From positions 186,001 to 250,000 of the IMG/VR virus record IMGVR_UViG_3300030041_000009: a stretch of 64,000 bases of DNA; one strand, written 5' to 3'. Under the pieces are notes generated by a model. It made no database searches. It was given only the letters and a program-made list of their open reading frames with translations, and was not told where the DNA came from. Every line of letters starts with the position of its first letter. Positions within the stretch are counted from its first letter, which is position 1. Both the position numbers and the translations under genes were made by a program. Below are positions 6,680 to 63,031 of the stretch, in pieces.

Positions 6680-7450
6680 ATGAAACTAATTGGATTTGCA
6701 AATAAATTTTATACTCTTTGGAGTTATTCAGAAGAACCTTTGTATAGAACAATTAACACTGAATCATATCAATATGGTATTAAACAGAATTATAATTATA
6801 TAAAAAATATTTCTTTTGATTTAGATAAAGTAAAAGAACTTTACCCTGACGTGAAAATTGATGAAGAATTAAAAGGAAAAAGTCAAAGTTGGTCAAAAGA
6901 GCCAAAATTTGAATATCCAGATAAATATTTTCATTTTGGTAAATATGAAAGTCAACTTATTAGTGAATGTAAAGATCAATCTTACTTGATATGGTATTTT
7001 GAAACTGGTGTTTATGGTGAACGTTATGAAATAGTTAAAAATAGATTAATTGAATTAGGTTGTTATTTTTATAATGATATATTATTTACATCAAAAGAAT
7101 TACTTGATCAAAATATTGAACATGAAAAAAAAGAATTTGATAATAAAAAAATAATTGCAGAAACTTATGAAAAATATAAAATTTCTGGTATTTTTTCACA
7201 TAATTTTTATCATTCTTTAAATAGTGAAGGAAATTATAGAGACAATTCATTTGAATTCAGATTCAATGAATATTCTCAACAATCTTATTCTGGTTATGAT
7301 TATGGATTACCATTAATGAATGGTAAATCAAAAAGAATAAAAAATAAAGTTCTCGAAATGGAAGTTATTACAGAAGAAGATAAAACTTTTGGAGATAAAT
7401 ATTTTAGAGTTTTAAGCCTTAAATCAGTAAAAAATATAGAAAATGACTAA
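6680..7450 (+). CDS. hypothetical protein (probable start MKLIGF at 6680)
   Basis: TATCTTTG promoter box at 6645-6652 lies inside the longer called ORF, favouring the ATG at 6680. Confidence 0.7.
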   Translation: MKLIGFANKFYTLWSYSEEPLYRTINTESYQYGIKQNYNYIKNISFDLDKVKELYPDVKIDEELKGKSQSWSKEPKFEYPDKYFHFGKYESQLISECKDQSYLIWYFETGVYGERYEIVKNRLIELGCYFYNDILFTSKELLDQNIEHEKKEFDNKKIIAETYEKYKISGIFSHNFYHSLNSEGNYRDNSFEFRFNEYSQQSYSGYDYGLPLMNGKSKRIKNKVLEMEVITEEDKTFGDKYFRVLSLKSVKNIEND

Positions 7451-8249
7451 TCAAGAATTGATACATGTATTTGAAGACACCAAATCACATAGTTCAGAAA
7501 TGCTAAATTCAGAAACTACATTACATTTATTTGACGAACGATTAATGTCAGATATTAGGATTCCTTGTTATGAAAATATACAGGTTATAAATTCTGATAG
7601 TGTATCTGCAGTTACAGAATATAGTAAATTAGGTAAAACTTGCGTTCTTAATATGGCATCATATAAACATCCAGGTGGCGGAGTTGCAAGAGGATCAAAA
7701 GCACAAGAAGAATGCTTATTTAGATGCTCAAATTTAACTCATGTTATTAATACTGATAACTATCCATTAGGAGACGATAAAGCGTTATATACAAAGAATG
7801 CTGTGTTTTTCAAAGATGTAAATTATAATTATATAAATGAAGTTGAGTCAGATGTTGTAACTATTGCAGCATTAAATCTTAATAATGTAGAAGTTGATTT
7901 TAATGATTATTCTGATACAATTACAAAAGATAATATATCATCAATTAATATTAATTCTGAAAAAATAACGAAATGGGATTATGAAGAACTCACCAAAGAA
8001 AAAATAAGATTAATACTATCTCTTGCTATTAAAAATGATGTAGATATTATAATTTTAGGTTCATTTGGATGTGGAGTATTCAAAAATGATCCTGAAGAAA
8101 TGGCTAAAATGTTCAAACATTTATTAGTAAATGAAGGATATTCTAAATATTTTGAAAAAGTTATATTTGCCATTATCAATGATAGAAACTCAGTAGGTAA
8201 TAATTATGAAATTTTCAAAAATGTTTTTAGTAATTACTATTTAATTTAA
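7443..8249 (+). CDS. TIGR02452/DUF2263-like microbial PARG (macro-domain ADP-ribose glycohydrolase)
   Basis: VLNMAS..PGGG..GSKAQEECLFRCSNL signature; ILGSFGCGVFKNDP. Confidence 0.88.
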   Translation: MTNQELIHVFEDTKSHSSEMLNSETTLHLFDERLMSDIRIPCYENIQVINSDSVSAVTEYSKLGKTCVLNMASYKHPGGGVARGSKAQEECLFRCSNLTHVINTDNYPLGDDKALYTKNAVFFKDVNYNYINEVESDVVTIAALNLNNVEVDFNDYSDTITKDNISSININSEKITKWDYEELTKEKIRLILSLAIKNDVDIIILGSFGCGVFKNDPEEMAKMFKHLLVNEGYSKYFEKVIFAIINDRNSVGNNYEIFKNVFSNYYLI

Positions 8250-13618: not shown

Positions 13619-14187
13619 AATATATAAAACAATTTGAATTAACAAAATTTTATGATGAAAAAGATATATTTAAATATATTTATGAAATTGATTCACCTAA
13701 AATTAAAGAATTGATATCTAAAATCCCAAATATAAATCTTAATATTAAAAATAGTAATGGAGATACTCCTTTAATAATCACTATAAGGTATGGGTTATAT
13801 CAAATATTTAAAATTTTAATTGATTCAGGAGCTGATGTTAATACTACTGATAATTTTGGAAATACTCCATTGATATTAGTAGTACGAAATAAAAAAGAAG
13901 AAATGATTCAAGATTTAATAACAGCAGGAGCAGATATAAATAAAATAAATAATAATAGTGAAACTGCATTAATTGTGAATTCTAATTATAATTATAGAGA
14001 TAAAAAAGCATTAAAAATAACTAAGTTTTTAATTGAAAATGGAGCAGATTGGAATATAACTGATGATATTGACCATACATTTATAGATTATTTACCTCCT
14101 GCATATAGAAAAGAAATTATAGAAGAATATCCAGAAGAATATTCAAATTATTTAATGGTTAAAAATACAAATAAATTTAATATATGA
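13615..14187 (+). CDS. MKYIK/KFNI tagged ankyrin-repeat protein
   Basis: GDTPLI, GADVN, GNTPLI, GADIN, GADWN. Confidence 0.9.
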   Translation: MKYIKQFELTKFYDEKDIFKYIYEIDSPKIKELISKIPNINLNIKNSNGDTPLIITIRYGLYQIFKILIDSGADVNTTDNFGNTPLILVVRNKKEEMIQDLITAGADINKINNNSETALIVNSNYNYRDKKALKITKFLIENGADWNITDDIDHTFIDYLPPAYRKEIIEEYPEEYSNYLMVKNTNKFNI

Positions 14188-14633
14188 AATATATAAAAAC
14201 ATTTGAACATATAATGGATAATGTATTGACATTAAATGATAAAGGATTATTTATAATATCAAATATTCCAGATACAACAACAGAATTATATTGCTATAAT
14301 AATAATTTAAAAGAATTGCCAACATTACCAGAGACATTAGAGATATTATCTTGTTTTAATAATGTTTTGCGTGAGTTACCTACTTTACCGCACTCAATAA
14401 AAAAAATATTTTGCTATTCTAATAATTTAAAAGAATTGCCGACATTACCATATTCATTAAAGACATTAAATTGTAGTAATAATAATTTATCTGAGTTACC
14501 ATTATTACCAGAGACATTAGAAATATTAGTATGTGAAGGTAATAACCTACCTTATAACAATTTAGATGAATATAACAAATGGTTAGAGATAAATCATCCT
14601 GATATATTTAATGCTAAAAAATTTAATATATAG
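14184..14633 (+). CDS. MKYIK/KFNI tagged leucine-rich repeat protein
   Basis: 20-aa LxxLxCxNNxLxELPxLP repeats. Confidence 0.9.
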   Translation: MKYIKTFEHIMDNVLTLNDKGLFIISNIPDTTTELYCYNNNLKELPTLPETLEILSCFNNVLRELPTLPHSIKKIFCYSNNLKELPTLPYSLKTLNCSNNNLSELPLLPETLEILVCEGNNLPYNNLDEYNKWLEINHPDIFNAKKFNI

Positions 14634-14637
14634 TAAT

Positions 14638-14949
14638 ATGAAAATACTAAAATTTAATGAGCATCAATTTACAATGTTAGATGATGATGTTATATTAGCA
14701 GGTAGATCTAAATATCCAGTAGGCACTAAAATCAAATTTAAAGAGGATGATGAGTATTTAACTGGTACTCTTACTCATCCATTTGGTTCCTGTAATGGTG
14801 ATGTTGGAGTGTATCTAGATCAAAAAGGAAAGTACGTGGATGATAGATTATGTTTAAAAAACAGAGAATATATAGTTATTGACGACGAAGTTGAAGAATT
14901 TATGAAAGATTATAAATTAAAACAAGATGCAAACAAATTCAATTTATAA
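14638..14949 (+). CDS. KFNL tagged protein (probable start MKILKFNE)
   Basis: TAATATATA at 14624-14632; ends ANKFNL. Confidence 0.8.
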   Translation: MKILKFNEHQFTMLDDDVILAGRSKYPVGTKIKFKEDDEYLTGTLTHPFGSCNGDVGVYLDQKGKYVDDRLCLKNREYIVIDDEVEEFMKDYKLKQDANKFNL

Positions 14950-14995
14950 GTGAAATAACTTATAAAGTGTATTTATAAGTGAAATAGCTTATAAA
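14943..14995. repeat. two tandem 24-bp palindromes
   Basis: TTTATAAG-TGAAATA(A/G)-CTTATAAA at 14943 and 14972. Confidence 0.7.
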
Positions 14996-14996
14996 T

Positions 14997-15035
14997 AAAA
15001 AATCCTATCTAATTTTTCAATTAGATAGGATTTTT
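14997..15035. terminator. bidirectional intrinsic terminator
   Basis: AAAATCCTATCTAATT..AATTAGATAGGATTTT. Confidence 0.8.
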
Positions 15036-15044
15036 ATTTTATAT

Positions 15045-15920
15045 TGCTTGAGAATACAGCATTATAGAGAAGAACTTTAGAAACTATTATTTTTTCTGCT
15101 TCTTTTCCACCAATCTTTTGAATTGGTACTCCTCCAATGACGGTCAATTAGATTCACCACTCCTTTTGTTGTTAATTACTCTCTTAATAATCATTACTCA
15201 TCTAGAATGCCTTCCAGATTAAATCTTGCGGATTTAGAGAACTTTCTTAAAAATCATGTTGGACTTGGGGTCTTTCACGGCTACGACGAATTGCTTCTCA
15301 TAACTAGTAGTCACCTATCACTAACAACAGTCGAACTCTTTTCCTTTATTTGTTTATTTTAATTTGCATTAAATTTGCAGTTAAAGTTTGTTTTGTGGAT
15401 GATGAAAGTAGTGGTTCGACAACCAGCTTCTCAATCTTTTGAACTGAGCTATACTAAACTACTCTCTGAGATATCCCTACCTCCATATTTTAAGTCAACT
15501 AAGATACTCTCGTAACACTTGGTAATGTTAAGGTAACCTTAATTACAGCACCACCTGTACATTGTATTACAATCTAATTTACCTTTCGGTTTTAAGTCAA
15601 CTTTTATATTGGATAACGCAATTACACAACTGGAAATCGTATTTCTTGCAATAATCCTTCAGGTTATTCTTATTGATGTTCCCATCTCACTCAGACTACC
15701 CACATAGCCTTTGCATTAAACCACTTTCTCTACAGTGTTACCCTCGATAATCAAGGTTTAATGATATCCTGATTGTCTGCTCAAGTATTATTGTTTACAA
15801 TTAATTTTATTTCCGAAAAAATAAAATCAACTGCACATTTAATACCGCAAGTTATAGAAACAACTATAACTCACTTTATACTACTTTCGTAGTTTATTTA
15901 TGACTACAGACAGCCAAATA
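15045..15920 (-). ncRNA. candidate large structured ncRNA (~870 nt)
   Basis: No ORF; markedly higher GC than flanks; many hairpins, including GNRA-capped CTAC-GAAA-GTAG, ACC-GAAA-GGT and AAATC(C)-GCAA-GATTT on the minus strand; boxA-like motif upstream and terminator downstream. Confidence 0.7.
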
Positions 15921-15947
15921 TTTTCAATTTTACAAAGAACGCTTTAA

Positions 15948-16087
15948 AAAAACAACAGAATTAATATAGAAGAATTTTAAATAAGACTTAACAAAAGCGA
16001 TAGAAAGACATTAACTTTCTGCTCATTATTGATCCACTTTCCTGGAATTTCAACCTACATAATTTTATATTAATTCATGTTGTTTTA
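15948..16087 (-). ncRNA. candidate rod-shaped small RNA
   Basis: Ends pair: AAAACAACAGAATTAATATA / TATATTAATTCATGTTGTTTT. Confidence 0.45.
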
Positions 16088-16257
16088 AAAGTTCAAGTAC
16101 TTTTACTTGAAAATGTCACAAATCTATTTCAGTCCTTTGTTCTTCACAGAACTTTATCATTGGAACAATAAACATTTGGTTATGTTCATTATATCTACTC
16201 TTGTAATATAAATCCTTGAATTTTTATTACTTTTGCAATATTTACTTTTGTAATATT

Positions 16258-16583
16258 AATCTCTCCTTTTGCAAGCTTCAAGGTGGCTATTGCCTTTGAT
16301 TATTTTTATTACTTTTTCAATTTCATTAATATCTAAGTGTGTTTAATTGCACTATCTCCTTTTGCAAGCTTCAAGGTGGTTTCTATCCCATTAGATTTTT
16401 TAGTTACTTATACAATATTTAATATCTAAGTGTGTTTAATTGCACTATCTCCTTTTGCAAGCTTCAAGGTGGTTTCTATCCCATTAGATTTTAATTGTTT
16501 CAGCAAGATACTTAATATATAAGTTGTGTTCATTTGCACTATCTCCTTTTGCAAGCTTCAAGGTGGTTTTTGTACCATTATAT
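16258..16583 (-). repeat. tandem structured-RNA repeat A: one partial copy plus three 66-67 bp copies at 93-bp period
   Basis: Cores at 16331-16396, 16424-16489, 16517-16583; partial at 16258-16301. Confidence 0.9.
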
Positions 16584-16973
16584 TTTTATTGCTTCAATCT
16601 GAAATTTGATTTGTTTCATTATTGTAGTCCAAATTTACAAAAAGTTTTTTGTTTTACCAAATATTTTTGAATTTTTATACTTTTTTAAATTAATAATAAT
16701 CTTACTAATCATAAATTGAAGTATCACATGGAAGCAATAAACTAGTTTCAATTAGATGATTATTATTTATTAAGTACAAAATTACAAAAAGTTTTTTGTT
16801 TTACCAAATATTTTTGAATTTTTTCTACATTTTTTTCAAGTACTCTTACTTGAAATGAGTATTAAAAAAAATCTTTTATCAGTTCTTTTAGCTTCTCAGC
16901 TTAGAAAAAATAAATTTTCATTTATCATATTTATTCTTGTAATTTAATAATCTTACGATTATTATCATTATCA

Positions 16974-17041
16974 ATCTAAGAGTGTTTAATTGCACTATCT
17001 TTCCTTTTGCAAGCTTCAAGGTGGTTTTTATCCCATTAGAT
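16974..17041 (-). ncRNA. structured repeat A, copy 5
   Basis: Same 68-bp cloverleaf motif just downstream of promoter at ~17085-17120. Confidence 0.75.
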
Positions 17042-17372
17042 TATCTATTAAATCTGAATTATGATTTTCTTTTTTATTGTAGTTCAAATTTACAAAAAGT
17101 TTTTTGTTTTACCAAATATTTTAATGTTAAAGTTTGAACTATTTTTCAAGTACTCCTACTTGTTTTTATCCAAGGAATTTTGATTAAATAATGTTATTAA
17201 ATCATATTATTTAAATTAACAGCTCTTTTTCAAGAGATTTCAATTAATTAATATACATTTTTTAATATTTATTATTTAACCAAAACTCGCTTGTTGTTGG
17301 TTATGAATATCAATAGTGGAACTTACTTTCAGAACAAGTTCTGATTTTCAGTGTTGAAATCAATATTCATAG

Positions 17373-17464
17373 TGAAGATAGAAGGAATTGAACCTTGTGT
17401 CATTGACACTTGCCCCTTCAAATTAGATTATTCTAATAATGATGCACCCTGTGTGCTTATCTCC
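17373..17464 (-). ncRNA. tRNA-like RNA lacking a canonical anticodon loop
   Basis: Acceptor GGAGATA/TATCTTC, D-like GCAC..GTGC, T-arm AAGG-TTCAATT-CCTT. Confidence 0.55.
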
Positions 17465-18076
17465 AACATTTTATAATTTAATCAATAATCAGTCCTTGTA
17501 GTGGAATGAAAGTAGTTAGTCACGTCTCATCTAACATTAGGATTTTATCATATTCGAAATTTAATTCCAATATTCAATCTCCACGGTGTGGTTGCTTTGT
17601 ATATTTATAACAAGATAAGTTCTACATGTCTTATATATCTGTTTCAATGGACTGTCTATCTTTGATAATATTGATTATTTAAGATTATAATCTTATCATT
17701 GACTCACCACTATGAGCTTCTCATTCATCTGGTTGATATATATTTTCTTATAAATATATACACTCAGAGCGCAAATCTCGCTGATATTTCTTGTTTAAAT
17801 CTGATTTTTTGATTTAAATTATTATAGAATAAATTTACAAAAAGTTTTTTGTTTTACCAAATATTTTTGAAAGTATTTTCTATTTTTTCTCAAGTACGTT
17901 TACAAGAGTAAATAAAAATCAAATCATTTTCAGTCCTTTTTATCTTCACAGATTAGAAACAGTAAGTTTGAACTTACTATATTTACTTTTGTAATATTAA
18001 ATTTATTTTCAAGTTTCACTATAAACTTTTTCAAGATTAAAGTTTGTTTCCTTACTACTAAATTATTATTACATTA

Positions 18077-18144
18077 ATCTAAGTGTGTTCATTTGCACTA
18101 TCTATACTCTCGCAAGCTTTGAGTTGGTTTTTGTACCATTAGAT
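18077..18144 (-). ncRNA. structured repeat A, copy 6 (diverged, compensatory changes)
   Basis: Inner stem ACTC/GAGT replaces CCTT/AAGG. Confidence 0.75.
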
Positions 18145-18850
18145 TTTTTTCAATCTGAAGTTTGATTTGTTTTTTATTGTAGTTCAAAGTTACAAAAAGT
18201 TTTTTGTTTTACCAAATATTTTAATGTTAAAGTTTGAACTTTTTTCAATTGAAATTTAATTTTTTAAAACTATATTTCTTTTTGAATTGTAGTTCAAAGT
18301 TACAAAAAGTTTTTTGTTTTACCAAATATTTTTGAAAGTTTTTTCTACTTTTTTTCAATTAAAATATAATTTTTATAATTACTTTTCTTTTGATGTTGTA
18401 GTTCAAAATTACAAAAAGTTTTTTGTTTTACCAAATATTTAATGTTAAAGTTTTGAACTTTTTTTCTCAAGTACTCTTACTTGATATTTTTTGTTGTAGA
18501 ATAAAATTACAAAAAGTTTTTTGTTTTACCAAATATTTAATGATAAAGTTTTGAAGTTTTTTTTTTTCAATACTATTACTTAAAAATTTTTGTTTTTTTA
18601 TTGTAGAATAAAATTATAAAAATGTTTTCATTTCACCAAATATTTAATGTTAAAGTTTTGAAATTTTTTTCAAGTCCTCTTATTAAATTATCAAATCAAC
18701 TAAGATATTTATTATTTTTCTTAGTTGATTTGATTGTAAATAATTACATTTGTTTTTGTTTGTGATGCAAAATTACTAAAAGTTTTCATATCACCAAATA
18801 TTTTAGTGTTAAATTTTAAAATATTTTTTAAATATTTATATATCAATAAA

Positions 18851-19180
18851 TTAATATTCTATATCGTAATAAAAACATAAATCTTTCATTGAGAAAAATA
18901 CTAATGTATCATTATTAGTTGCAAAATCAACTTCTTTATCTGCTCCGCTTGATTCTCCTGGTAATCTTAATATACAATCACAACTTTTTATCCATTCTAA
19001 ATCTAATTTCAACCAATCTTCATATGGTCTGGGATGATGCATATGTTGAAAATGGAAATATAATGGAACGAATGGCGCAAATCCTTTATTTATTAATTCA
19101 TCTGCCATATCAATTTGAGTTTTGACATTAACTGCAGGATCTCCTTTTGTATAAGGAGATGCAATATAAACTTTAATCAT
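18851..19180 (-). CDS. nucleoside deoxyribosyltransferase-like / DUF4406-type protein
   Basis: VYIASPYT, DLEWIKSCD..LRLPGESSGADKE. Confidence 0.75.
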   Translation of the reverse strand: MIKVYIASPYTKGDPAVNVKTQIDMADELINKGFAPFVPLYFHFQHMHHPRPYEDWLKLDLEWIKSCDCILRLPGESSGADKEVDFATNNDTLVFFSMKDLCFYYDIEY

Positions 19181-19403
19181 ATTATTTATTTTATTTTTAT
19201 ACTAAAAATTCTAATGCAAGAAAAGCTAACACAAGAAGAATAACGCCAATTGTCATAATTATATTATTAGTTCTTTGAGTTTTACATGTACAATTTTTAT
19301 TTTTATGCCCACAAACTTCACATATCATATCGTCATTAATATCTTCTAACCATTTTTTATCGTCCTGCATATTTGATTTTTATTTTTTAATATATATGGT
19401 ATT

Positions 19404-22495: not shown

Positions 22496-24145
22496 ATGTT
22501 AAACTATAATGATTATAATAAACTAAATGAAGCTTTTTTTCATCGTAGTAAAGATGAATTGGAAAACCTTATTCATTCTTTTAAAAGCTTAATTATAAAT
22601 TTGAAGCAATCTATTGATAAAAAATACACATTAGATTTCTATAAAACTCAAATTAAAGAAGATTTAGAATCATATAAAACATATTTATTAAATAATTATA
22701 ATAAAAATACTATGGGTAAATTTAAAGATTTATTTAAAGATTTTTTAAATAATGTAGATGATGATATAATTAAACAGATGAGATTAGGTAAATTTGCTAA
22801 TGATATTCTAAAAATATATTCTATAACAAATTCATTTGATATTAATATAAAGAATGCAGATAGTGTTTTCAAAGCATATCTTGATAATGTTGATAGATAT
22901 ATAGATAACACTTATGAATTTTTCTACAATAAAATTGAAACTGATAAGTCATATGAACCATATAATAAAATAGATATTAAAATAAATAAAGTACCTTTTG
23001 ATGATTATCAAAAAACAAAATATAAATATCAAATAGAATTATTGAAATTACAAGAGTGGATTGTATATAATAATAAAAAAGTGTTAATTATATTTGAAGG
23101 TAGAGATGCAGCAGGAAAAGGATCTGCAATTAGAAATATAACAAGATTTCTTGATCCTAAGCATTTTAAAGTTCAAACTTTTGGTATTCCTTCAGAAGAA
23201 GAAAGTGATAATTGGTTTGAAAGATATGAAAAAGTGTTACCTAAAAACGGTGAAATTGTGTTCTTTGATAGATCTTGGTATACAAGAGGTTATGTAGAAC
23301 CTGTAATGGGATATTCAAATGAAGATAAATATAATAAATTCATGAAAGAAGTCAATAATTTTGAAGATAAATTAATTGATGATGATATAATACTTATAAA
23401 AATATGGTTTTCTATATCTCAGGATGTACAAAAAATGAGGTTTGAATTAAGAAAATCTAACCCATTAAAATATTGGAAATTTAGTAAGAATGATGAACAA
23501 ACTTTAGATAAATGGGACGAATTTACTAAATATATAAATGAAATTTTCAAAAAAACAAATACTAAAAATGCTCCTTGGATAATAATAGATGCAGATGATG
23601 AAAATTATTCCAGATTAGAATCATTTAATGGTATAATAAAAACTATTGAAAAAGATAAAGAAAAAGAAAAAGATGGAGGAATAAAAGTAATATTTGAAGA
23701 TATTGATGGACCACTTATTCCTTATAATAAAAATTCTGATGTAAATTATCATAAATTTTTTAATGAGCCTGATAAATGGAGTAAAACTGCCATGAGTAAT
23801 TTAAACACAATAATTGAAAAAACAGATGCTAAAGTTGTTTTATCTTCATCATATAGAGATGATAAACCTAAAAGTAAAATAGAAGATATGATGAAAAAAG
23901 CAGGTTTTAAATATAAAATATATGACTGTGTTCCAAATGACAAATCTAAAAAAAGAGGTGCCGATATAAAAGATTGGTTGAAAAATAATAAAATAGTTAG
24001 TAATTTTATAATTATAGATGATAATAAGCATGATTTATATGATGTATTTAATAAAAAACATATTGTTAAAACCACTCATGAATTAGGTATAACAGATGAT
24101 ATTATGAATGAAGCAATTGAAAAGTTAAATAATAATAATAAATAA
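22496..24145 (+). CDS. ppk2: polyphosphate kinase 2 fused to a C-terminal HAD-like domain
   Basis: FEGRDAAGKG Walker A, FFDRSWY, PLKYWKFS, APWIII; C-terminal IFEDIDGPL, VLSSS, RGADI..WL, FIIIDD. Confidence 0.88.
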   Translation: MLNYNDYNKLNEAFFHRSKDELENLIHSFKSLIINLKQSIDKKYTLDFYKTQIKEDLESYKTYLLNNYNKNTMGKFKDLFKDFLNNVDDDIIKQMRLGKFANDILKIYSITNSFDINIKNADSVFKAYLDNVDRYIDNTYEFFYNKIETDKSYEPYNKIDIKINKVPFDDYQKTKYKYQIELLKLQEWIVYNNKKVLIIFEGRDAAGKGSAIRNITRFLDPKHFKVQTFGIPSEEESDNWFERYEKVLPKNGEIVFFDRSWYTRGYVEPVMGYSNEDKYNKFMKEVNNFEDKLIDDDIILIKIWFSISQDVQKMRFELRKSNPLKYWKFSKNDEQTLDKWDEFTKYINEIFKKTNTKNAPWIIIDADDENYSRLESFNGIIKTIEKDKEKEKDGGIKVIFEDIDGPLIPYNKNSDVNYHKFFNEPDKWSKTAMSNLNTIIEKTDAKVVLSSSYRDDKPKSKIEDMMKKAGFKYKIYDCVPNDKSKKRGADIKDWLKNNKIVSNFIIIDDNKHDLYDVFNKKHIVKTTHELGITDDIMNEAIEKLNNNNK

Positions 24146-30378: not shown

Positions 30379-31317
30379 TTAGAAGAAATTAGCAGCATCA
30401 ATATATTTGAATCCACATCTTTTAGCAAATGTTTTATCACTTGTTAAATCTCCAACCATTATGCATTGAGATGGATCAAGTTTATATTTTTCAATAAATT
30501 CTATTCCTAGTCCAACTCCTGGTTTTCTACAATAGCAAGTTATTGGAGGAACTGAATGCCCACAATATTTATAATCAATATTAACTCCTAGCATTTCATT
30601 TGTTTTTTCAAAACAAGCTATTGCTGTATCATTAGATAATAATCCTTTTGCTATTCCACTTTGATTTGAAACTCCAAGTAATATATAACCTTGACTTTGT
30701 AATTCTAAAAGTTTTTCTGTTCTACCTGGAATTATTTCAATATCACTAATATCAGTTGGATAATGTTCACCACTTTTAGTTAATCTCAATGTACCATCAT
30801 AATCAAATAAAATTGCTTTATTTTTATATTCTGATGAATAACGTTTAAAATCTATTTTTTCTATATCATCAATACCTTCTGATAATTCAGGTGCTTCAAA
30901 ATTTTTATTAATTTTATAAAGTGCAGCAACAGGAAACATATGTGGATCATTAGAGTTAGAATATTCACTTAATTCTGTGAATAATTTACCATATTTTCTT
31001 ATCATTCTTGTTACCTGATTGAACATACAATCTTCAATTTTTGTAGTAAAATGAATACATAATATATAATAATTATATTTTTTTGCTAATTCAATAACAT
31101 CAGCCCTAGATAATTTAGTTGAATATGTTCCATCTAATACAATATCCACGCCATCTAACATTAATTGTTCAAGTTTTTTATTAAGAGAACTTAATGTATC
31201 TCCTTCAATATCTCTTGATAGTAATGTACATTTATAATCAACATATTTTTCAATGATGCTTGATTTACCTGCTGCTGGTAATCCACAAGATATGACTAAT
31301 TTTTTATCTTTTTTCAT
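30379..31317 (-). CDS. polynucleotide kinase / HAD phosphatase (PNKP-like)
   Basis: GLPAAGKS P-loop, VLDGT; HAD FDYDGTL, SNQSG, CRKP, MVGD. Confidence 0.85.
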   Translation of the reverse strand: MKKDKKLVISCGLPAAGKSSIIEKYVDYKCTLLSRDIEGDTLSSLNKKLEQLMLDGVDIVLDGTYSTKLSRADVIELAKKYNYYILCIHFTTKIEDCMFNQVTRMIRKYGKLFTELSEYSNSNDPHMFPVAALYKINKNFEAPELSEGIDDIEKIDFKRYSSEYKNKAILFDYDGTLRLTKSGEHYPTDISDIEIIPGRTEKLLELQSQGYILLGVSNQSGIAKGLLSNDTAIACFEKTNEMLGVNIDYKYCGHSVPPITCYCRKPGVGLGIEFIEKYKLDPSQCIMVGDLTSDKTFAKRCGFKYIDAANFF

Positions 31318-44566: not shown

Positions 44567-44659
44567 AAAGAAAGGTTGGATTCGAACCAACATAAATGAA
44601 TATTTTTTATATAAACGCTTTTTTGGCTTTACTAGTCTGACCTTTTGACTTACTTTCTT
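44567..44659 (-). ncRNA. tRNA-like RNA / pseudo-tRNA
   Basis: Acceptor AAGAAAG/CTTTCTT, D-arm AGTC..GACT, T-arm GTTGG-TTCGAAT-CCAAC; no canonical anticodon arm. Confidence 0.6.
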
Positions 44660-44746: not shown

Positions 44747-44844
44747 TAGTTAGGATAGGACTCGAACCTATATAAGAAATAATCTTTGAGCTACCTCACT
44801 AATGGGACTTTTACCCAAACGTCTAACCTTTCCGCCACCTAGCT
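44747..44844 (-). ncRNA. tRNA-like RNA (class II-like D arm, aberrant anticodon region)
   Basis: TGGCGGAAAGGTTAGACG D region; T-arm ATAGG-TTCGAGT-CCTAT. Confidence 0.6.
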
Positions 44845-54817: not shown

Positions 54818-55840
54818 TCAATTAATTAAATATTCATTGTTAATGACCTTAAAACTTATTGATGAATCAATTGATTTAAATACACTTCCCTCCCTTTTTG
54901 ATGAATTTGTTAATACAGATTTGCCTTCAACATGTTTTAATATTTCATCAATAGTGCCAGGTAATTTATAATAACTACAAATTAAAGGAACCGTGTCAGC
55001 ATTTAATACATTAGTTACAATATCAACGAATGTATTATAATCTTCCAATTTATATTCATCTATATTAAAAACTCTAAAATATTTTATTGTTTTATGGCTT
55101 AATTTATAGTTATTGCCTTCTATTCCTGAACCAATTAATTCACCTTGAACAGCAATATTTTTACCATATATTCTTAATTTCTCTTCAATATTATTTTCAA
55201 TTGCAAATTTCCAAAATAAATTATTTGGATTTCTTTTAAATTCCCAGTTTCTACCACACACGCCAAATACTCCATTATGTAAATACATAGTGGTAGATTG
55301 ACCATCAAGTTTCTCTGTTTCATAGAATATTACATTATCTTTTTTCCATTCATCGAAATCATCAGATAAATTTTGTGCGCGTTCTTCATTTGTCTTCAAT
55401 ATGAATGAAGGAATAGGACCAACAACATCAGCTTTAAGTTCATCAGGTATTGGAACTTCAAATTTTACAACATTTAGATAATCAGATACATCATCACCTT
55501 CTGTCAATTTAAATATATGACAAGGTGTATCATTTAAAATATCTAATGACATTATTAGTCCACATGAAAATTGTTTGCGTAATTTGACCGTTCTCAAGAG
55601 GAAACCTTCTTGTTCATCAGTTTTTCTATATGAACTATTTCTAAGAAATTCAAATTCTTCTCTAATAGGTAATAGTGAATCAATTTCAAAATAAACAACT
55701 TTGTCACCTACTTTAAATTCGTCTTTTTTAACTACTACTTTCCAACCTTTTATGCGTGCAACCTCTATTCTATCTGCTCCTTTAATTGGTAATATGTCTT
55801 TAATTACCTGAATTGTTGCTAATTTTCTATCTATATTCAT
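54818..55840 (-). CDS. ATP-dependent RNA ligase, DRB0094 family
   Basis: N-terminal LATIQ..I.PI.GADRIE; TEKLDG (motif I), QGELIG, EGSVFK, SFKVIN. Confidence 0.9.
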   Translation of the reverse strand: MNIDRKLATIQVIKDILPIKGADRIEVARIKGWKVVVKKDEFKVGDKVVYFEIDSLLPIREEFEFLRNSSYRKTDEQEGFLLRTVKLRKQFSCGLIMSLDILNDTPCHIFKLTEGDDVSDYLNVVKFEVPIPDELKADVVGPIPSFILKTNEERAQNLSDDFDEWKKDNVIFYETEKLDGQSTTMYLHNGVFGVCGRNWEFKRNPNNLFWKFAIENNIEEKLRIYGKNIAVQGELIGSGIEGNNYKLSHKTIKYFRVFNIDEYKLEDYNTFVDIVTNVLNADTVPLICSYYKLPGTIDEILKHVEGKSVLTNSSKREGSVFKSIDSSISFKVINNEYLIN

Positions 55841-62927: not shown

Positions 62928-62960
62928 AAAAATAAATATACCTTATGAAAAATATATTTG

Positions 62961-63031
62961 TGCTCACTATCGGATTCAAACCGATGTAGGTAGTTTTAGA
63001 GGCTACCGCCCTATCACTGGACTAAATGAGC
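62961..63031 (-). tRNA. tRNA with CUA anticodon (amber suppressor), no encoded CCA
   Basis: Acceptor GCTCATT/AGTGAGC+A, D-stem GTCC/GGGC, anticodon arm GTAGC-CTCTAAA-ACTAC, T-arm ATCGG-TTTGAAT-CCGAT; 71 nt. Confidence 0.85.

What the first reader, a model, noticed from the sequence alone, without database searches (positions are those of the whole stretch)
15045..15920. Large (~870 nt) structured RNA in the GOLLD/ROOL size class
Seen: GC-enriched, ORF-free, multiple GNRA-capped hairpins on the minus strand, bounded by a boxA-like motif and a terminator. I do not recognise rRNA, tmRNA, RNase P or intron signatures in it. Established: phages encode large ornate RNAs (GOLLD, ROOL), often near tRNAs. 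Family identity cannot be assigned by eye.
Basis: partly seen in the sequence, partly recalled or inferred. Interest (0 to 1): 0.7.

Follow-up and report, generated by a model that had tools for sequence, protein, structure and literature searches.

The report
GOLLD RNA in a peat megaphage
The flagged stretch is a roughly 870-nt GOLLD RNA gene, a known giant phage RNA that builds RNA-only cages; it sits in a huge peat-soil phage, is abundantly transcribed, and lies at the end of an unusual protein-free island of other small RNAs.

Summary
Window 15045-15466 (minus strand) matches the whole Rfam GOLLD model (RF02032) at 278.9 bits, against a gathering score of 150. The 5' half (15467 to about 15915) aligns with 15 distinct GOLLD loci from other viral contigs. 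It shows 99 predicted pairs, 64 of them with compensatory changes. Four peat and permafrost metatranscriptomes hold contigs over about 15046-15900 at word depths of 69-451, while the adjacent protein genes sit at essentially zero depth. A 17-bp terminator hairpin follows the gene. The family is therefore known, and this is a new member carried by an AT-rich (22% GC) megaphage fragment. The surroundings are less ordinary. GOLLD ends a 3.8 kb ORF-free, transcribed island. The island holds eight identical Bacteroidota-type promoter repeats, arrays of an undescribed 66-76-nt cloverleaf-like RNA, and a roughly 450-nt RNA with a tRNA-like 3' end. In relatives, ordinary tRNA arrays occupy this position.

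The parts
15045..15920 (-). Complete GOLLD RNA gene, about 871-876 nt. The structured core spans 15915-15045.
   Evidence: Rfam match; alignment and covariation of the 5' domain; RNA contigs over 15046/15052/15074/15142 to 15898/15900 at depths of 69-451; MFE z -5.09.
15045..15466 (-). GOLLD 3' domain, the universally conserved half covered by Rfam RF02032, including its AU-rich linker and long-range helix.
   Evidence: 278.9 bits against a gathering score of 150, model positions 1-416 of 416, not truncated.
15467..15915 (-). GOLLD 5' domain, the less conserved half. It carries a clade-specific insertion of about 80 nt near 15790-15870.
   Evidence: Alignment A2 with 15 distinct homologues has 99 pairs, 64 of them compensatory. 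94.8% of cells are paired, against 36-42% with slid partners.
15917..15940 (-). boxA-like leader motif (GTTCTTTG-TAAAATTGAAAATATT), just upstream of the structured core.
   Evidence: It is conserved 37-112 nt upstream of the GOLLD core in about 14 of 15 distinct loci and is unique in the 214 kb record. The core GTTCTTTGAAAA lies 26-210 nt upstream of 16S or 23S rRNA, on the same strand, in 10 of 20 bacterial loci tested.
14998..15035 (.). Bidirectional intrinsic-terminator hairpin with a 17-bp stem. It is shared with the convergent protein gene at 14611-14949.
   Evidence: RNA contigs stop before it, at 15046-15074.
16630..18798 (-). Context: promoter-like repeats of the Bacteroidota type (TTTGG-N19-TAAnTTTG). 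There are eight exact 27-mers at 16635-61, 16782-808, 17090-116, 17835-61, 18190-216, 18300-26, 18409-35 and 18507-33, plus a diverged copy at 18768-98.
   Evidence: (0 expected by chance). They occur only here in the 214 kb record. A similar unit precedes GOLLD in L018, and promoters of the same TTTG-N20-TAnnTTTG type precede the tRNAs in LR745206.1.
16235..16588 (-). Context: tandem array of the 66-76-nt cloverleaf-like RNA. Full copies are at 16326-16401, 16419-16494 and 16512-16588, with a 3'-chimeric copy at 16235-16306.
   Evidence: 90-100 bits with model R1. RNA depth is 63-160.
16969..17046 (-). Context: solitary copy of the cloverleaf-like RNA, behind its own promoter repeat and leader.
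   Evidence: 90.8 bits.
18002..18149 (-). Context: cloverleaf-like RNA copy at 18072-18149 and a degenerate copy at 18002-18068.
   Evidence: 89.6 and 28.1 bits.
17372..17830 (-). Context: RNA of about 450 nt with no family assignment. Its 3' end (17463-17372) folds as a tRNA-like element with an acceptor stem, a D-arm, an extra arm and a GGUUCAAUUCC T-arm.
   Evidence: RNA contigs run from 17380/17414/17416/17453 to 17860 at depths of 10-90, and a sequencing adapter is joined at 17416 in run X8. MFE z is -2.35. It is about 80% conserved in L003 and L033. There is no Rfam or ARAGORN call.

Best explanation
Window 15045-15920 (minus strand) is a GOLLD RNA gene carried by an AT-rich megaphage from peat or permafrost.

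Shown here:
- It matches the whole GOLLD covariance model.
- Its 5' domain shares a covarying fold with other GOLLDs.
- It accumulates as a very abundant RNA of about 855-870 nt in environmental metatranscriptomes, while neighbouring protein genes are undetectable.

Inferred:
- Transcription starts upstream of 15940, either from a promoter of its own or by read-through from the repeated Bacteroidota-type promoters of the island.
- It passes a conserved rrn-type boxA element. That element probably recruits Nus factors and shields this long untranslated transcript from Rho (about 0.5).
- It stops at the hairpin at 14998-15035, and both ends are then trimmed.

By homology with the GOLLD env-38 cryo-EM structure, the RNA should fold into separate 5' and 3' domains and self-assemble into a hollow homo-14-mer cage (about 0.7 for this member).

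The biological role of GOLLD cages is unsolved. My committed guess (about 0.3) is a role in the phage's takeover of translation and tRNA metabolism late in infection, acting on tRNA-shaped RNAs or ribosomes. In this phage it is co-expressed with tRNA-like RNAs and sits in a window that encodes RNA-repair enzymes.
For: Identity: RF02032 scores 278.9 bits against a gathering score of 150, covers the full model, and has E about 1e-79. All 14 related loci tested also carry GOLLD at 236-323 bits, as does LR745206.1 at 287 bits.

Structure: the 5' domain has 99 pairs, 64 of them compensatory. 94.8% of cells are paired, against 36-42% for slid partners, and the shuffle maximum is 48 compensatory pairs. 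The strand-specific MFE z-score is -5.09.

Expression: in four RNA runs, contigs cover about 15046-15900 at word depths of 451, 272, 265 and 69. Depth is essentially zero (0 in every bin but one, 0.41 in one bin of one run) over 14000-14959 and 0 over 18480-18790.

Terminator.

boxA: conservation is shown, uniqueness in the record, and the same core upstream of rRNA genes.

Phage context: the window is part of an IMG/VR virus record of 214.5 kb rated about 30% complete. It encodes RNA ligase, a Pnkp-like enzyme and a PPK2-HAD protein, and the RNA ligase has relatives in phages, including 735 kb phages.

Cage, tRNA and ribosome links for the family come from bioRxiv 10.1101/2024.12.08.627333.
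Against: - No canonical tRNA lies next to this GOLLD. The nearest is about 29 kb away, so the usual tRNA-island association holds only in a modified form.
- The Logan contigs are unstranded and their depth is a contig-wide mean. Strand and exact ends are therefore inferred, not read directly.
- Oligomerisation, Nus binding and any function are untested for this member.
- The window's boxA differs from the consensus at one position (T for A).
- The leader at 15920-16050 has little or no coverage in two of the four RNA runs. If boxA is transcribed, it is removed afterwards.
Confidence: 0.93

Rival explanations
1. It is a new family of large ornate RNA that only resembles GOLLD in size. This is the novelty the first reader left open.
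For: The 5' domain is not covered by the Rfam model and carries a clade-specific insertion.
Against: The full 416-position GOLLD model matches at 278.9 bits. The 5' domain is homologous to the 5' domains of 15 other loci that all carry Rfam-positive GOLLD 3' domains.
Confidence: 0.01
2. The interval is protein-coding under an alternative genetic code, or is a decayed gene. The nearby TAG-suppressor tRNA suggests recoding.
For: A tRNA with anticodon CTA lies at 62960-63031. ORF coverage rises slightly under TAG read-through in two 10-kb bins of the record.
Against: No frame opens across 15045-18850 under TAG=Q or table 4. Covariation preserves base pairs, not codons. The rest of the window is densely coding under table 11.
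Confidence: 0.01
3. The RNA-run signal is contaminating phage DNA, not transcription.
For: Logan contigs from RNA libraries can contain DNA, and the tool itself warns of this.
Against: Depth is essentially zero (0.41 in one bin of one run, otherwise 0) over the flanking protein genes at 14000-14959 and 0 over 18480-18790 in all four runs, but 69-451 over GOLLD. The same pattern repeats in four separate samples. At least 12 metatranscriptomes hold the stretch.
Confidence: 0.02
4. It is GOLLD, but it acts as a monomeric or protein-bound RNA, for example a ribozyme, a ribosome-binding regulator or a decoy for host nucleases. On this view the cage seen in vitro is not the functional form.
For: The function of GOLLD is unknown and ribosome pull-down has been reported (the paper read). 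The window encodes RNA repair enzymes, which suggests an RNA-damage arms race.
Against: For env-38 the 14-mer persists at nanomolar concentrations, and the intermolecular contacts covary or are conserved across the family (paper). No catalytic activity has been reported.
Confidence: 0.2
5. The conserved GTTCTTTGAAAA element upstream of GOLLD is not an antitermination boxA. It could instead be a promoter or operator element, a processing site, or a 5' extension of the GOLLD fold.
For: Its distance to the core varies from 37 to 112 nt. The leader is poorly covered in two RNA runs. The promoters point to a Bacteroidota host, and I did not see this motif beside rRNA genes in the two Bacteroidota loci tested.
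Against: The 12-nt core is identical to the element found 26-210 nt upstream of 16S or 23S rRNA on the same strand in 10 of 20 loci. It always lies on the GOLLD strand, between any upstream tRNAs and the GOLLD core. A long untranslated RNA is the kind of transcript that needs protection from Rho (general knowledge).
Confidence: 0.4

Closest known systems
GOLLD RNA (Rfam RF02032; Weinberg et al. 2009; cryo-EM 14-mer of env-38, Kretsch et al., bioRxiv 10.1101/2024.12.08.627333)
   Same: It matches the full 3'-domain covariance model. It has the two-domain architecture with an AU-rich linker and a length of about 870 nt. It has a covarying 5' domain, lies in a phage, and is strongly expressed.
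   Different: It is carried by a 22% GC megaphage fragment from peat with Bacteroidota-type promoters. No canonical tRNAs are adjacent. The 5' domain has a clade-specific insertion. A conserved rrn-type boxA leader is documented here; I did not find it described for GOLLD in the papers searched.
ROOL RNA (Rfam RF03087)
   Same: It is a large ornate phage or prophage RNA, often beside tRNA islands, that forms an RNA-only cage (an octamer).
   Different: There is no Rfam match to ROOL anywhere in the window. Sequence and fold are unrelated, and ROOL averages about 580 nt.
rRNA operon leader and spacer boxA (NusB/NusE antitermination site)
   Same: The 12-nt core GTTCTTTGAAAA is identical to the element found upstream of 16S and 23S rRNA in Bacillales, Lactobacillales and a Mycoplasmopsis. 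It lies in the leader of a long, structured, untranslated RNA.
   Different: It sits in front of a phage RNA rather than rRNA. The window copy has one substitution. Nus-factor binding was not tested. The naming of the rrn element as boxA rests on my own knowledge, not on a paper retrieved here.
Phage tRNA arrays next to GOLLD (for example loci L007, L011, L013 and LR745206.1)
   Same: The position and orientation relative to GOLLD are the same, and in LR745206.1 the same TTTG-N20-TAnnTTTG promoter type precedes the individual RNA genes.
   Different: In the window's clade the array members are not tRNAs. They are 66-76-nt cloverleaf-like RNAs with an 11-nt invariant loop and no tRNA D- or T-loop signatures. 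Both ARAGORN and the Rfam tRNA model are negative.

Membership tests
GOLLD (RF02032) | Score at or above Rfam's gathering threshold over the conserved 3' domain | tested here: met
   278.9 bits against 150, model positions 1-416 of 416, no truncation.
GOLLD (RF02032) | The long-range helix or pseudoknot and the multi-stem junctions of the 3' domain are kept | tested here: met
   The cmscan alignment shows the bracketed long-range helix without flagged non-canonical pairs, and only six isolated non-canonical pairs elsewhere.
GOLLD (RF02032) | Giant size (about 800 nt or more), with a less conserved 5' domain joined to the 3' domain | tested here: met
   The core is 871 nt (15915-15045). RNA contigs of 757-827 nt cover it, and longer ones run on upstream.
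GOLLD (RF02032) | The 5' domain is structured and supported by covariation among homologues | tested here: met
   64 of 99 pairs carry compensatory changes in 16 distinct sequences, well above the shuffled and slid controls.
GOLLD (RF02032) | Encoded by a phage or prophage | tested here: met
   The window is part of an IMG/VR virus record. It carries phage-type RNA ligase and Pnkp genes. This 5'-domain subtype is absent from about 186,000 species genomes and present on 25 viral contigs.
GOLLD (RF02032) | Frequently adjacent to tRNA genes (a common association, not a defining feature) | tested here: not met
   There is no tRNA within about 29 kb in the window, and only 5-6 in the 214 kb record. 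None was found in the clade relatives L003 and L018. tRNA-like RNAs take their place.
GOLLD (RF02032) | Accumulates as an abundant RNA | tested here: met
   Depth is 69-451 in four metatranscriptomes, against essentially 0 on the flanking genes.
GOLLD (RF02032) | Self-assembles into a D7 homo-14-mer cage | not testable with these tools
   This is known only for env-38 (paper). The bridge loops could not be mapped without the paper's figures or alignment.
ROOL (RF03087) | Match to the ROOL covariance model | tested here: not met
   There is no hit at the gathering threshold in the window, and none at E<=1 in 14900-19200.
tRNA (RF00005), tested for the 66-76-nt repeat and for the 3' end of the ~450-nt RNA | Match to the tRNA models, a 7-nt anticodon loop and a T-loop consensus | tested here: not met
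   ARAGORN finds none. Rfam gives no tRNA hit at these elements even at E<=10. The repeat's central loop is 11 nt.
rrn-type boxA antitermination element | Conserved boxA core in the transcribed leader of a long untranslated RNA, and NusB/NusE binding | tested here: inconclusive
   Core sequence and position are met. Factor binding and antitermination cannot be tested here.

The most novel reading that the evidence does not exclude
In this megaphage clade GOLLD is the terminal gene of a dedicated 3.8 kb non-coding RNA island that is heavily transcribed and free of protein genes. The tRNA arrays that accompany GOLLD in other phages have been replaced here by two things. One is an array of an undescribed cloverleaf-like RNA with an invariant palindrome-bearing loop (AAGCUU), which could form kissing contacts. 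The other is a roughly 450-nt RNA with a tRNA-like end. On this reading these tRNA-shaped RNAs are the partners or cargo of the GOLLD cage, or decoys in a tRNA-targeted defence conflict. The whole GOLLD family would also use an rRNA-type boxA antitermination leader.
Probability: 0.15. Interest if true: 0.7.

Novelty: new member of a known kind. Interest (0 to 1): 0.35.

Why it matters
GOLLD has been one of the few giant bacterial and phage RNAs of unknown function since 2009. Recent cryo-EM work showed that it forms a 14-mer RNA cage, but what the cage does is still open. This instance adds no new class. It does add three usable facts.

- GOLLD is among the most abundant transcripts of a peat/permafrost megaphage in situ.
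- A conserved rRNA-type boxA leader precedes GOLLD across diverse phages. That points to Nus-dependent antitermination and gives a direct handle for expression studies.
- In one clade the neighbouring tRNAs are replaced by non-tRNA cloverleaf RNAs. This is a natural experiment for testing whether GOLLD's link to tRNAs concerns tRNA shape rather than decoding.

Tried and rejected
- Alternative codes (TAG=Q, table 4) over 14900-19300 opened no long frame.
- Permissive Rfam scans of the island (E<=1 and E<=10) gave only noise.
- ARAGORN found no tRNA or tmRNA in the island or in L003 and L018.
- I considered whether the ~450-nt RNA is a tmRNA. Its acceptor stem is local, neither ARAGORN nor Rfam calls a tmRNA there, and I looked for no tag reading frame, so I rejected the idea.
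- I considered whether the cloverleaf repeat is a known small ribozyme or a divergent tRNA. There is no Rfam support, the loop is 11 nt, and I rejected the idea.
- Literature searches for the boxA sequence gave nothing useful.
- A scan of about 186,000 species genomes for the GOLLD 5'-domain motif found nothing, so no host could be named that way.
- A pattern scan and a covariance-model search found the cloverleaf RNA only in the window's own low-GC clade. Two hits on GC-richer contigs were chance matches.
- The strain variants seen in the RNA contigs fall mostly in unpaired or variable columns and tell nothing about structure.
- Complementarity between the repeat's loop and GOLLD was judged by eye only. 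The single 7-mer match lies in a paired region and is within chance, so I did not pursue it.

Full report
**What is at the coordinates**

A scan of the whole window against Rfam 15 gives one strong non-tRNA hit. GOLLD (RF02032) matches window 15045-15466 on the minus strand at 278.9 bits, against a gathering score of 150. All 416 model positions are matched, and E is about 1e-78. The hit was repeated and on the parent record. The Rfam model covers only the universally conserved 3' half of GOLLD, so the rest of the flagged interval had to be tested separately.

The interval is GC-enriched, at 0.31-0.35 against about 0.22 for the record. It has no ORF above 51 aa under table 11, and none of 60 aa or more lying wholly inside it under TAG=Q or table 4. 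It folds far better than shuffles on the minus strand (z = -5.09) but not on the plus strand (z = -1.29).

**The 5' half**

A 25-nt motif from the 5' half pulled 25 viral contigs from IMG/VR. All 14 of those tested carry a full GOLLD 3' domain at 236-323 bits, as does the 635 kb uncultured phage LR745206.1. Six loci are identical to the window over 1040 nt, so the same phage occurs in several samples. L003 and L017 are about 85-88% identical to the window, L018 about 71%, and the rest 56-69%.

I aligned the 5' region of the window with 15 other distinct sequences. RNAalifold gives 99 pairs, of which 64 have compensatory double changes. My own control on the same alignment shows 94.8% of cells paired, against 36-42% when partners are slid by 1-3 columns. 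It shows 64 compensatory pairs, against a maximum of 48 in 300 column shuffles.

The first covarying pair starts at window 15915. The window and L003 carry an extra hairpin insertion of about 80 nt.

**Expression**

The stretch is held almost completely by five peat metagenome DNA runs, and in part (55-73% of sampled words) by at least twelve peat, permafrost or bioreactor metatranscriptomes. I laid four RNA runs on 14000-18790.

- The convergent protein genes at 14000-14959 have essentially no depth in all four runs (0 in every bin but one, 0.41 in one bin of one run). This serves as an internal control against DNA carry-over.
- GOLLD is covered by contigs from 15046, 15052, 15074 or 15142 up to 15898 or 15900 in two runs. 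In the other two runs the contigs continue to 16355. Word depths are 451, 272, 265 and 69.
- In the two runs with separate contigs, the leader at 15920-16050 is empty or nearly so. The mature 5' end therefore lies close to the structured core.
- The contigs stop short of the terminator hairpin at 14998-15035, which suggests 3' trimming.

These are unstranded assembler contigs with contig-wide depths. Strand and exact ends remain inferences.

**The boxA-like motif**

GTTCTTTGTAAA at 15940-15929 is the only match to GTTCTTTG[AT]AAA in the 214 kb record.

In the GOLLD-oriented upstream 500 nt of the distinct homologous loci, GTTCTTTG (most often as GTTCTTTGAAAATATT) lies 37-112 nt before the conserved start of the core in about 14 of 15 loci with enough sequence. 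The surrounding sequence has diverged. This holds whether tRNA arrays lie upstream of GOLLD (L013, LR745206.1) or downstream of it (L007, L011).

To test the boxA reading without relying on memory, I scanned bacterial genomes for TGTTCTTTGAAAAC and ran Rfam on 20 of the hits.

- In 10 loci the motif lies 26-210 nt upstream of a 16S or 23S rRNA gene on the same strand. These are Neobacillus, Bacillus, Paenibacillus, Lactiplantibacillus and Mycoplasmopsis, the last with both a leader copy and a spacer copy.
- In five more loci the motif sits at the end of the fetched locus, in most cases at or near a contig end, as expected where rRNA operons break assemblies.

The core is therefore a genuine rRNA leader and spacer element. 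Calling it boxA (the NusB/NusE site) rests on my own knowledge of rrn antitermination, because two literature searches returned nothing useful. The inference that GOLLD transcription uses Nus-type antitermination is plausible for a long untranslated RNA, but it is untested.

**Genomic setting**

The window is part of an IMG/VR virus record of 214.5 kb, which CheckV rates about 30% complete. It is 22.2% GC and appears to be a megaphage fragment.

The window encodes an RNA ligase, a Pnkp-like kinase/phosphatase, a PPK2 fused to an 'RNA repair' HAD domain, a PARG-like protein, a methylase and an epimerase. The RNA ligase's relatives are in phages, including 735 kb phages.

The motif TTTG-N18-21-TAnnTTTG, which I know as the Bacteroidota sigma-A promoter consensus, occurs 15 times against 4.6 expected. 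This suggests a Bacteroidota host. The 5'-domain subtype is absent from about 186,000 species genomes.

**The island upstream of GOLLD**

From 14950 to 18850 there is no ORF of 60 aa or more under table 11. The part from 15046 to about 18330 is present in the RNA runs at depths of about 10-160. It contains three kinds of element.

1. *Promoter repeats.* There are eight identical 27-mers of the promoter type, all on the GOLLD strand, with 0 expected by chance. They occur nowhere else in the record. In L018 a similar unit sits directly upstream of GOLLD, and in LR745206.1 promoters of the same TTTG-N20-TAnnTTTG type precede the individual tRNAs.

2. *A cloverleaf-like RNA of 66-76 nt.* The window has five full copies, one chimeric copy and one degenerate copy. 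The related phages have eight or more copies.
 - Five of the six copies found as direct repeats were folded; the four full ones fold as the same four-way junction, and the chimeric one does not.
 - On 16 distinct copies, 90.9% of cells pair, against 29-50% for slid partners. Five pairs show compensatory changes, against 1.5 in shuffles (1 of 500 reached the observed value).
 - The 11-nt loop R-AAGCUUGC-RA is constant apart from its two R positions.
 - It is not a tRNA by ARAGORN or Rfam.
 - It is confined to this low-GC clade.

3. *An RNA of about 450 nt (17372-17830).* It is about 80% conserved in two sister phages and ends in a tRNA-like element.

In the GC-richer relatives the same neighbourhood holds ordinary tRNA arrays, with up to about 30 genes. 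The record that contains the window has only five or six tRNAs, none of them near GOLLD.

**Mechanism and comparison**

The family-level facts come from the cryo-EM study.

- GOLLD env-38 forms a hollow D7 14-mer.
- The 5' domains form the caps and the 3' domains form the rings.
- The linker faces the interior.
- tRNAs sometimes sit in the linker.
- Ribosomes have been pulled down with GOLLD.
- Expression rises at lysis.

By homology I expect this member to behave in the same way, but no tool here can test assembly. Membership in GOLLD is met on every defining feature I could test. The common association with tRNAs, which is not a defining feature, is not met in its canonical form.

**Verdict**

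The finding is real and correctly delimited. It is a GOLLD RNA, which is a known family, and this is a new member. The parts worth carrying forward are the in-situ abundance, the family-wide rrn-type boxA leader, and the replacement of tRNA arrays by tRNA-shaped but non-tRNA RNAs in this clade.

Noticed in passing
window 16235-16588, 16969-17046, 18002-18149 (minus); also L003 3720-5510, L029, L031 and L033: An undescribed 66-76-nt cloverleaf-like RNA occurs in tandem arrays about 93 nt apart. Its stems covary and its 11-nt loop carries the invariant core AAGCUUGC, which includes the palindrome AAGCUU. It is transcribed at depths of 63-160. It has no Rfam or tRNA assignment and is confined to this low-GC peat megaphage clade.
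   Followed up: partly
window 17372-17860 (minus): An RNA of about 450 nt with no family assignment is present in four metatranscriptomes and is about 80% conserved in two sister phages. Its 3' end forms a tRNA-like element. In run X8 a sequencing adapter is joined at 17416, inside that element, which suggests a discrete RNA end or cleavage there.
   Followed up: partly
window 18150-18800 (minus): Five or six promoter-like repeats stand only 98-158 nt apart in 16-17% GC sequence, each followed by a short hairpin. RNA depth falls to zero beyond about 18480. It is unclear whether these make tiny transcripts, act as a promoter or sigma-factor sink, or serve another role such as an origin.
   Followed up: no
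window 16119-16259 and 17920-18000 (minus): A second repeated element (families D10 and D13) follows the last cloverleaf unit of two arrays and ends in a CAAGTA-NNNN-TACTTG hairpin. The Rfam tRNA model gives a weak hit (16.3 bits) at 17954-18051, overlapping the upstream copy.
   Followed up: no
window 62960-63031 (minus): A tRNA with anticodon CTA, which would read TAG. ORF coverage under TAG read-through rises only in two 10-kb bins of the 214 kb record (0.43 to 0.63 and 0.57 to 0.70). Recoding, if it happens, is local. The window itself reads well under table 11.
   Followed up: partly
window 44567-44659 (minus) and about 44747-44844 (minus): There are two neighbouring tRNA-model hits of 93 and 98 nt (41.4 and 28.8 bits). 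The first has a 27-nt insert at the anticodon loop. ARAGORN misses both. They may be intron-containing or otherwise unusual tRNAs.
   Followed up: no
window 54818-55840 (-), 30379-31317 (-), 22496-24145 (+), 7443-8249 (+): An RNA-repair and damage-response gene set lies in the same window as the RNA island. It comprises an RNA ligase (with a PHA02142 OB domain), a Pnkp-like kinase/phosphatase, a PPK2 fused to a HAD_SAK_2 'RNA repair' domain, and a microbial PARG-like protein.
   Followed up: partly
L002 (LR745206.1) 2293-2384: An 88-92-nt tRNA-shaped gene lies upstream of that phage's GOLLD. ARAGORN calls it with a two-base anticodon, and Rfam scores it weakly as tmRNA (22.8 bits). It resembles the tRNA-like end of the window's ~450-nt RNA in size.
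   Followed up: no
window 15293, 15496, 15544, 15614-15615: Three of the four RNA runs carry the same five substitutions relative to the window, which is a strain variant. The four that lie in the 5'-domain alignment fall mostly in unpaired or variable columns, and 15544 restores the family-consensus U; 15293 lies in the 3' domain and was not mapped.
   Followed up: yes
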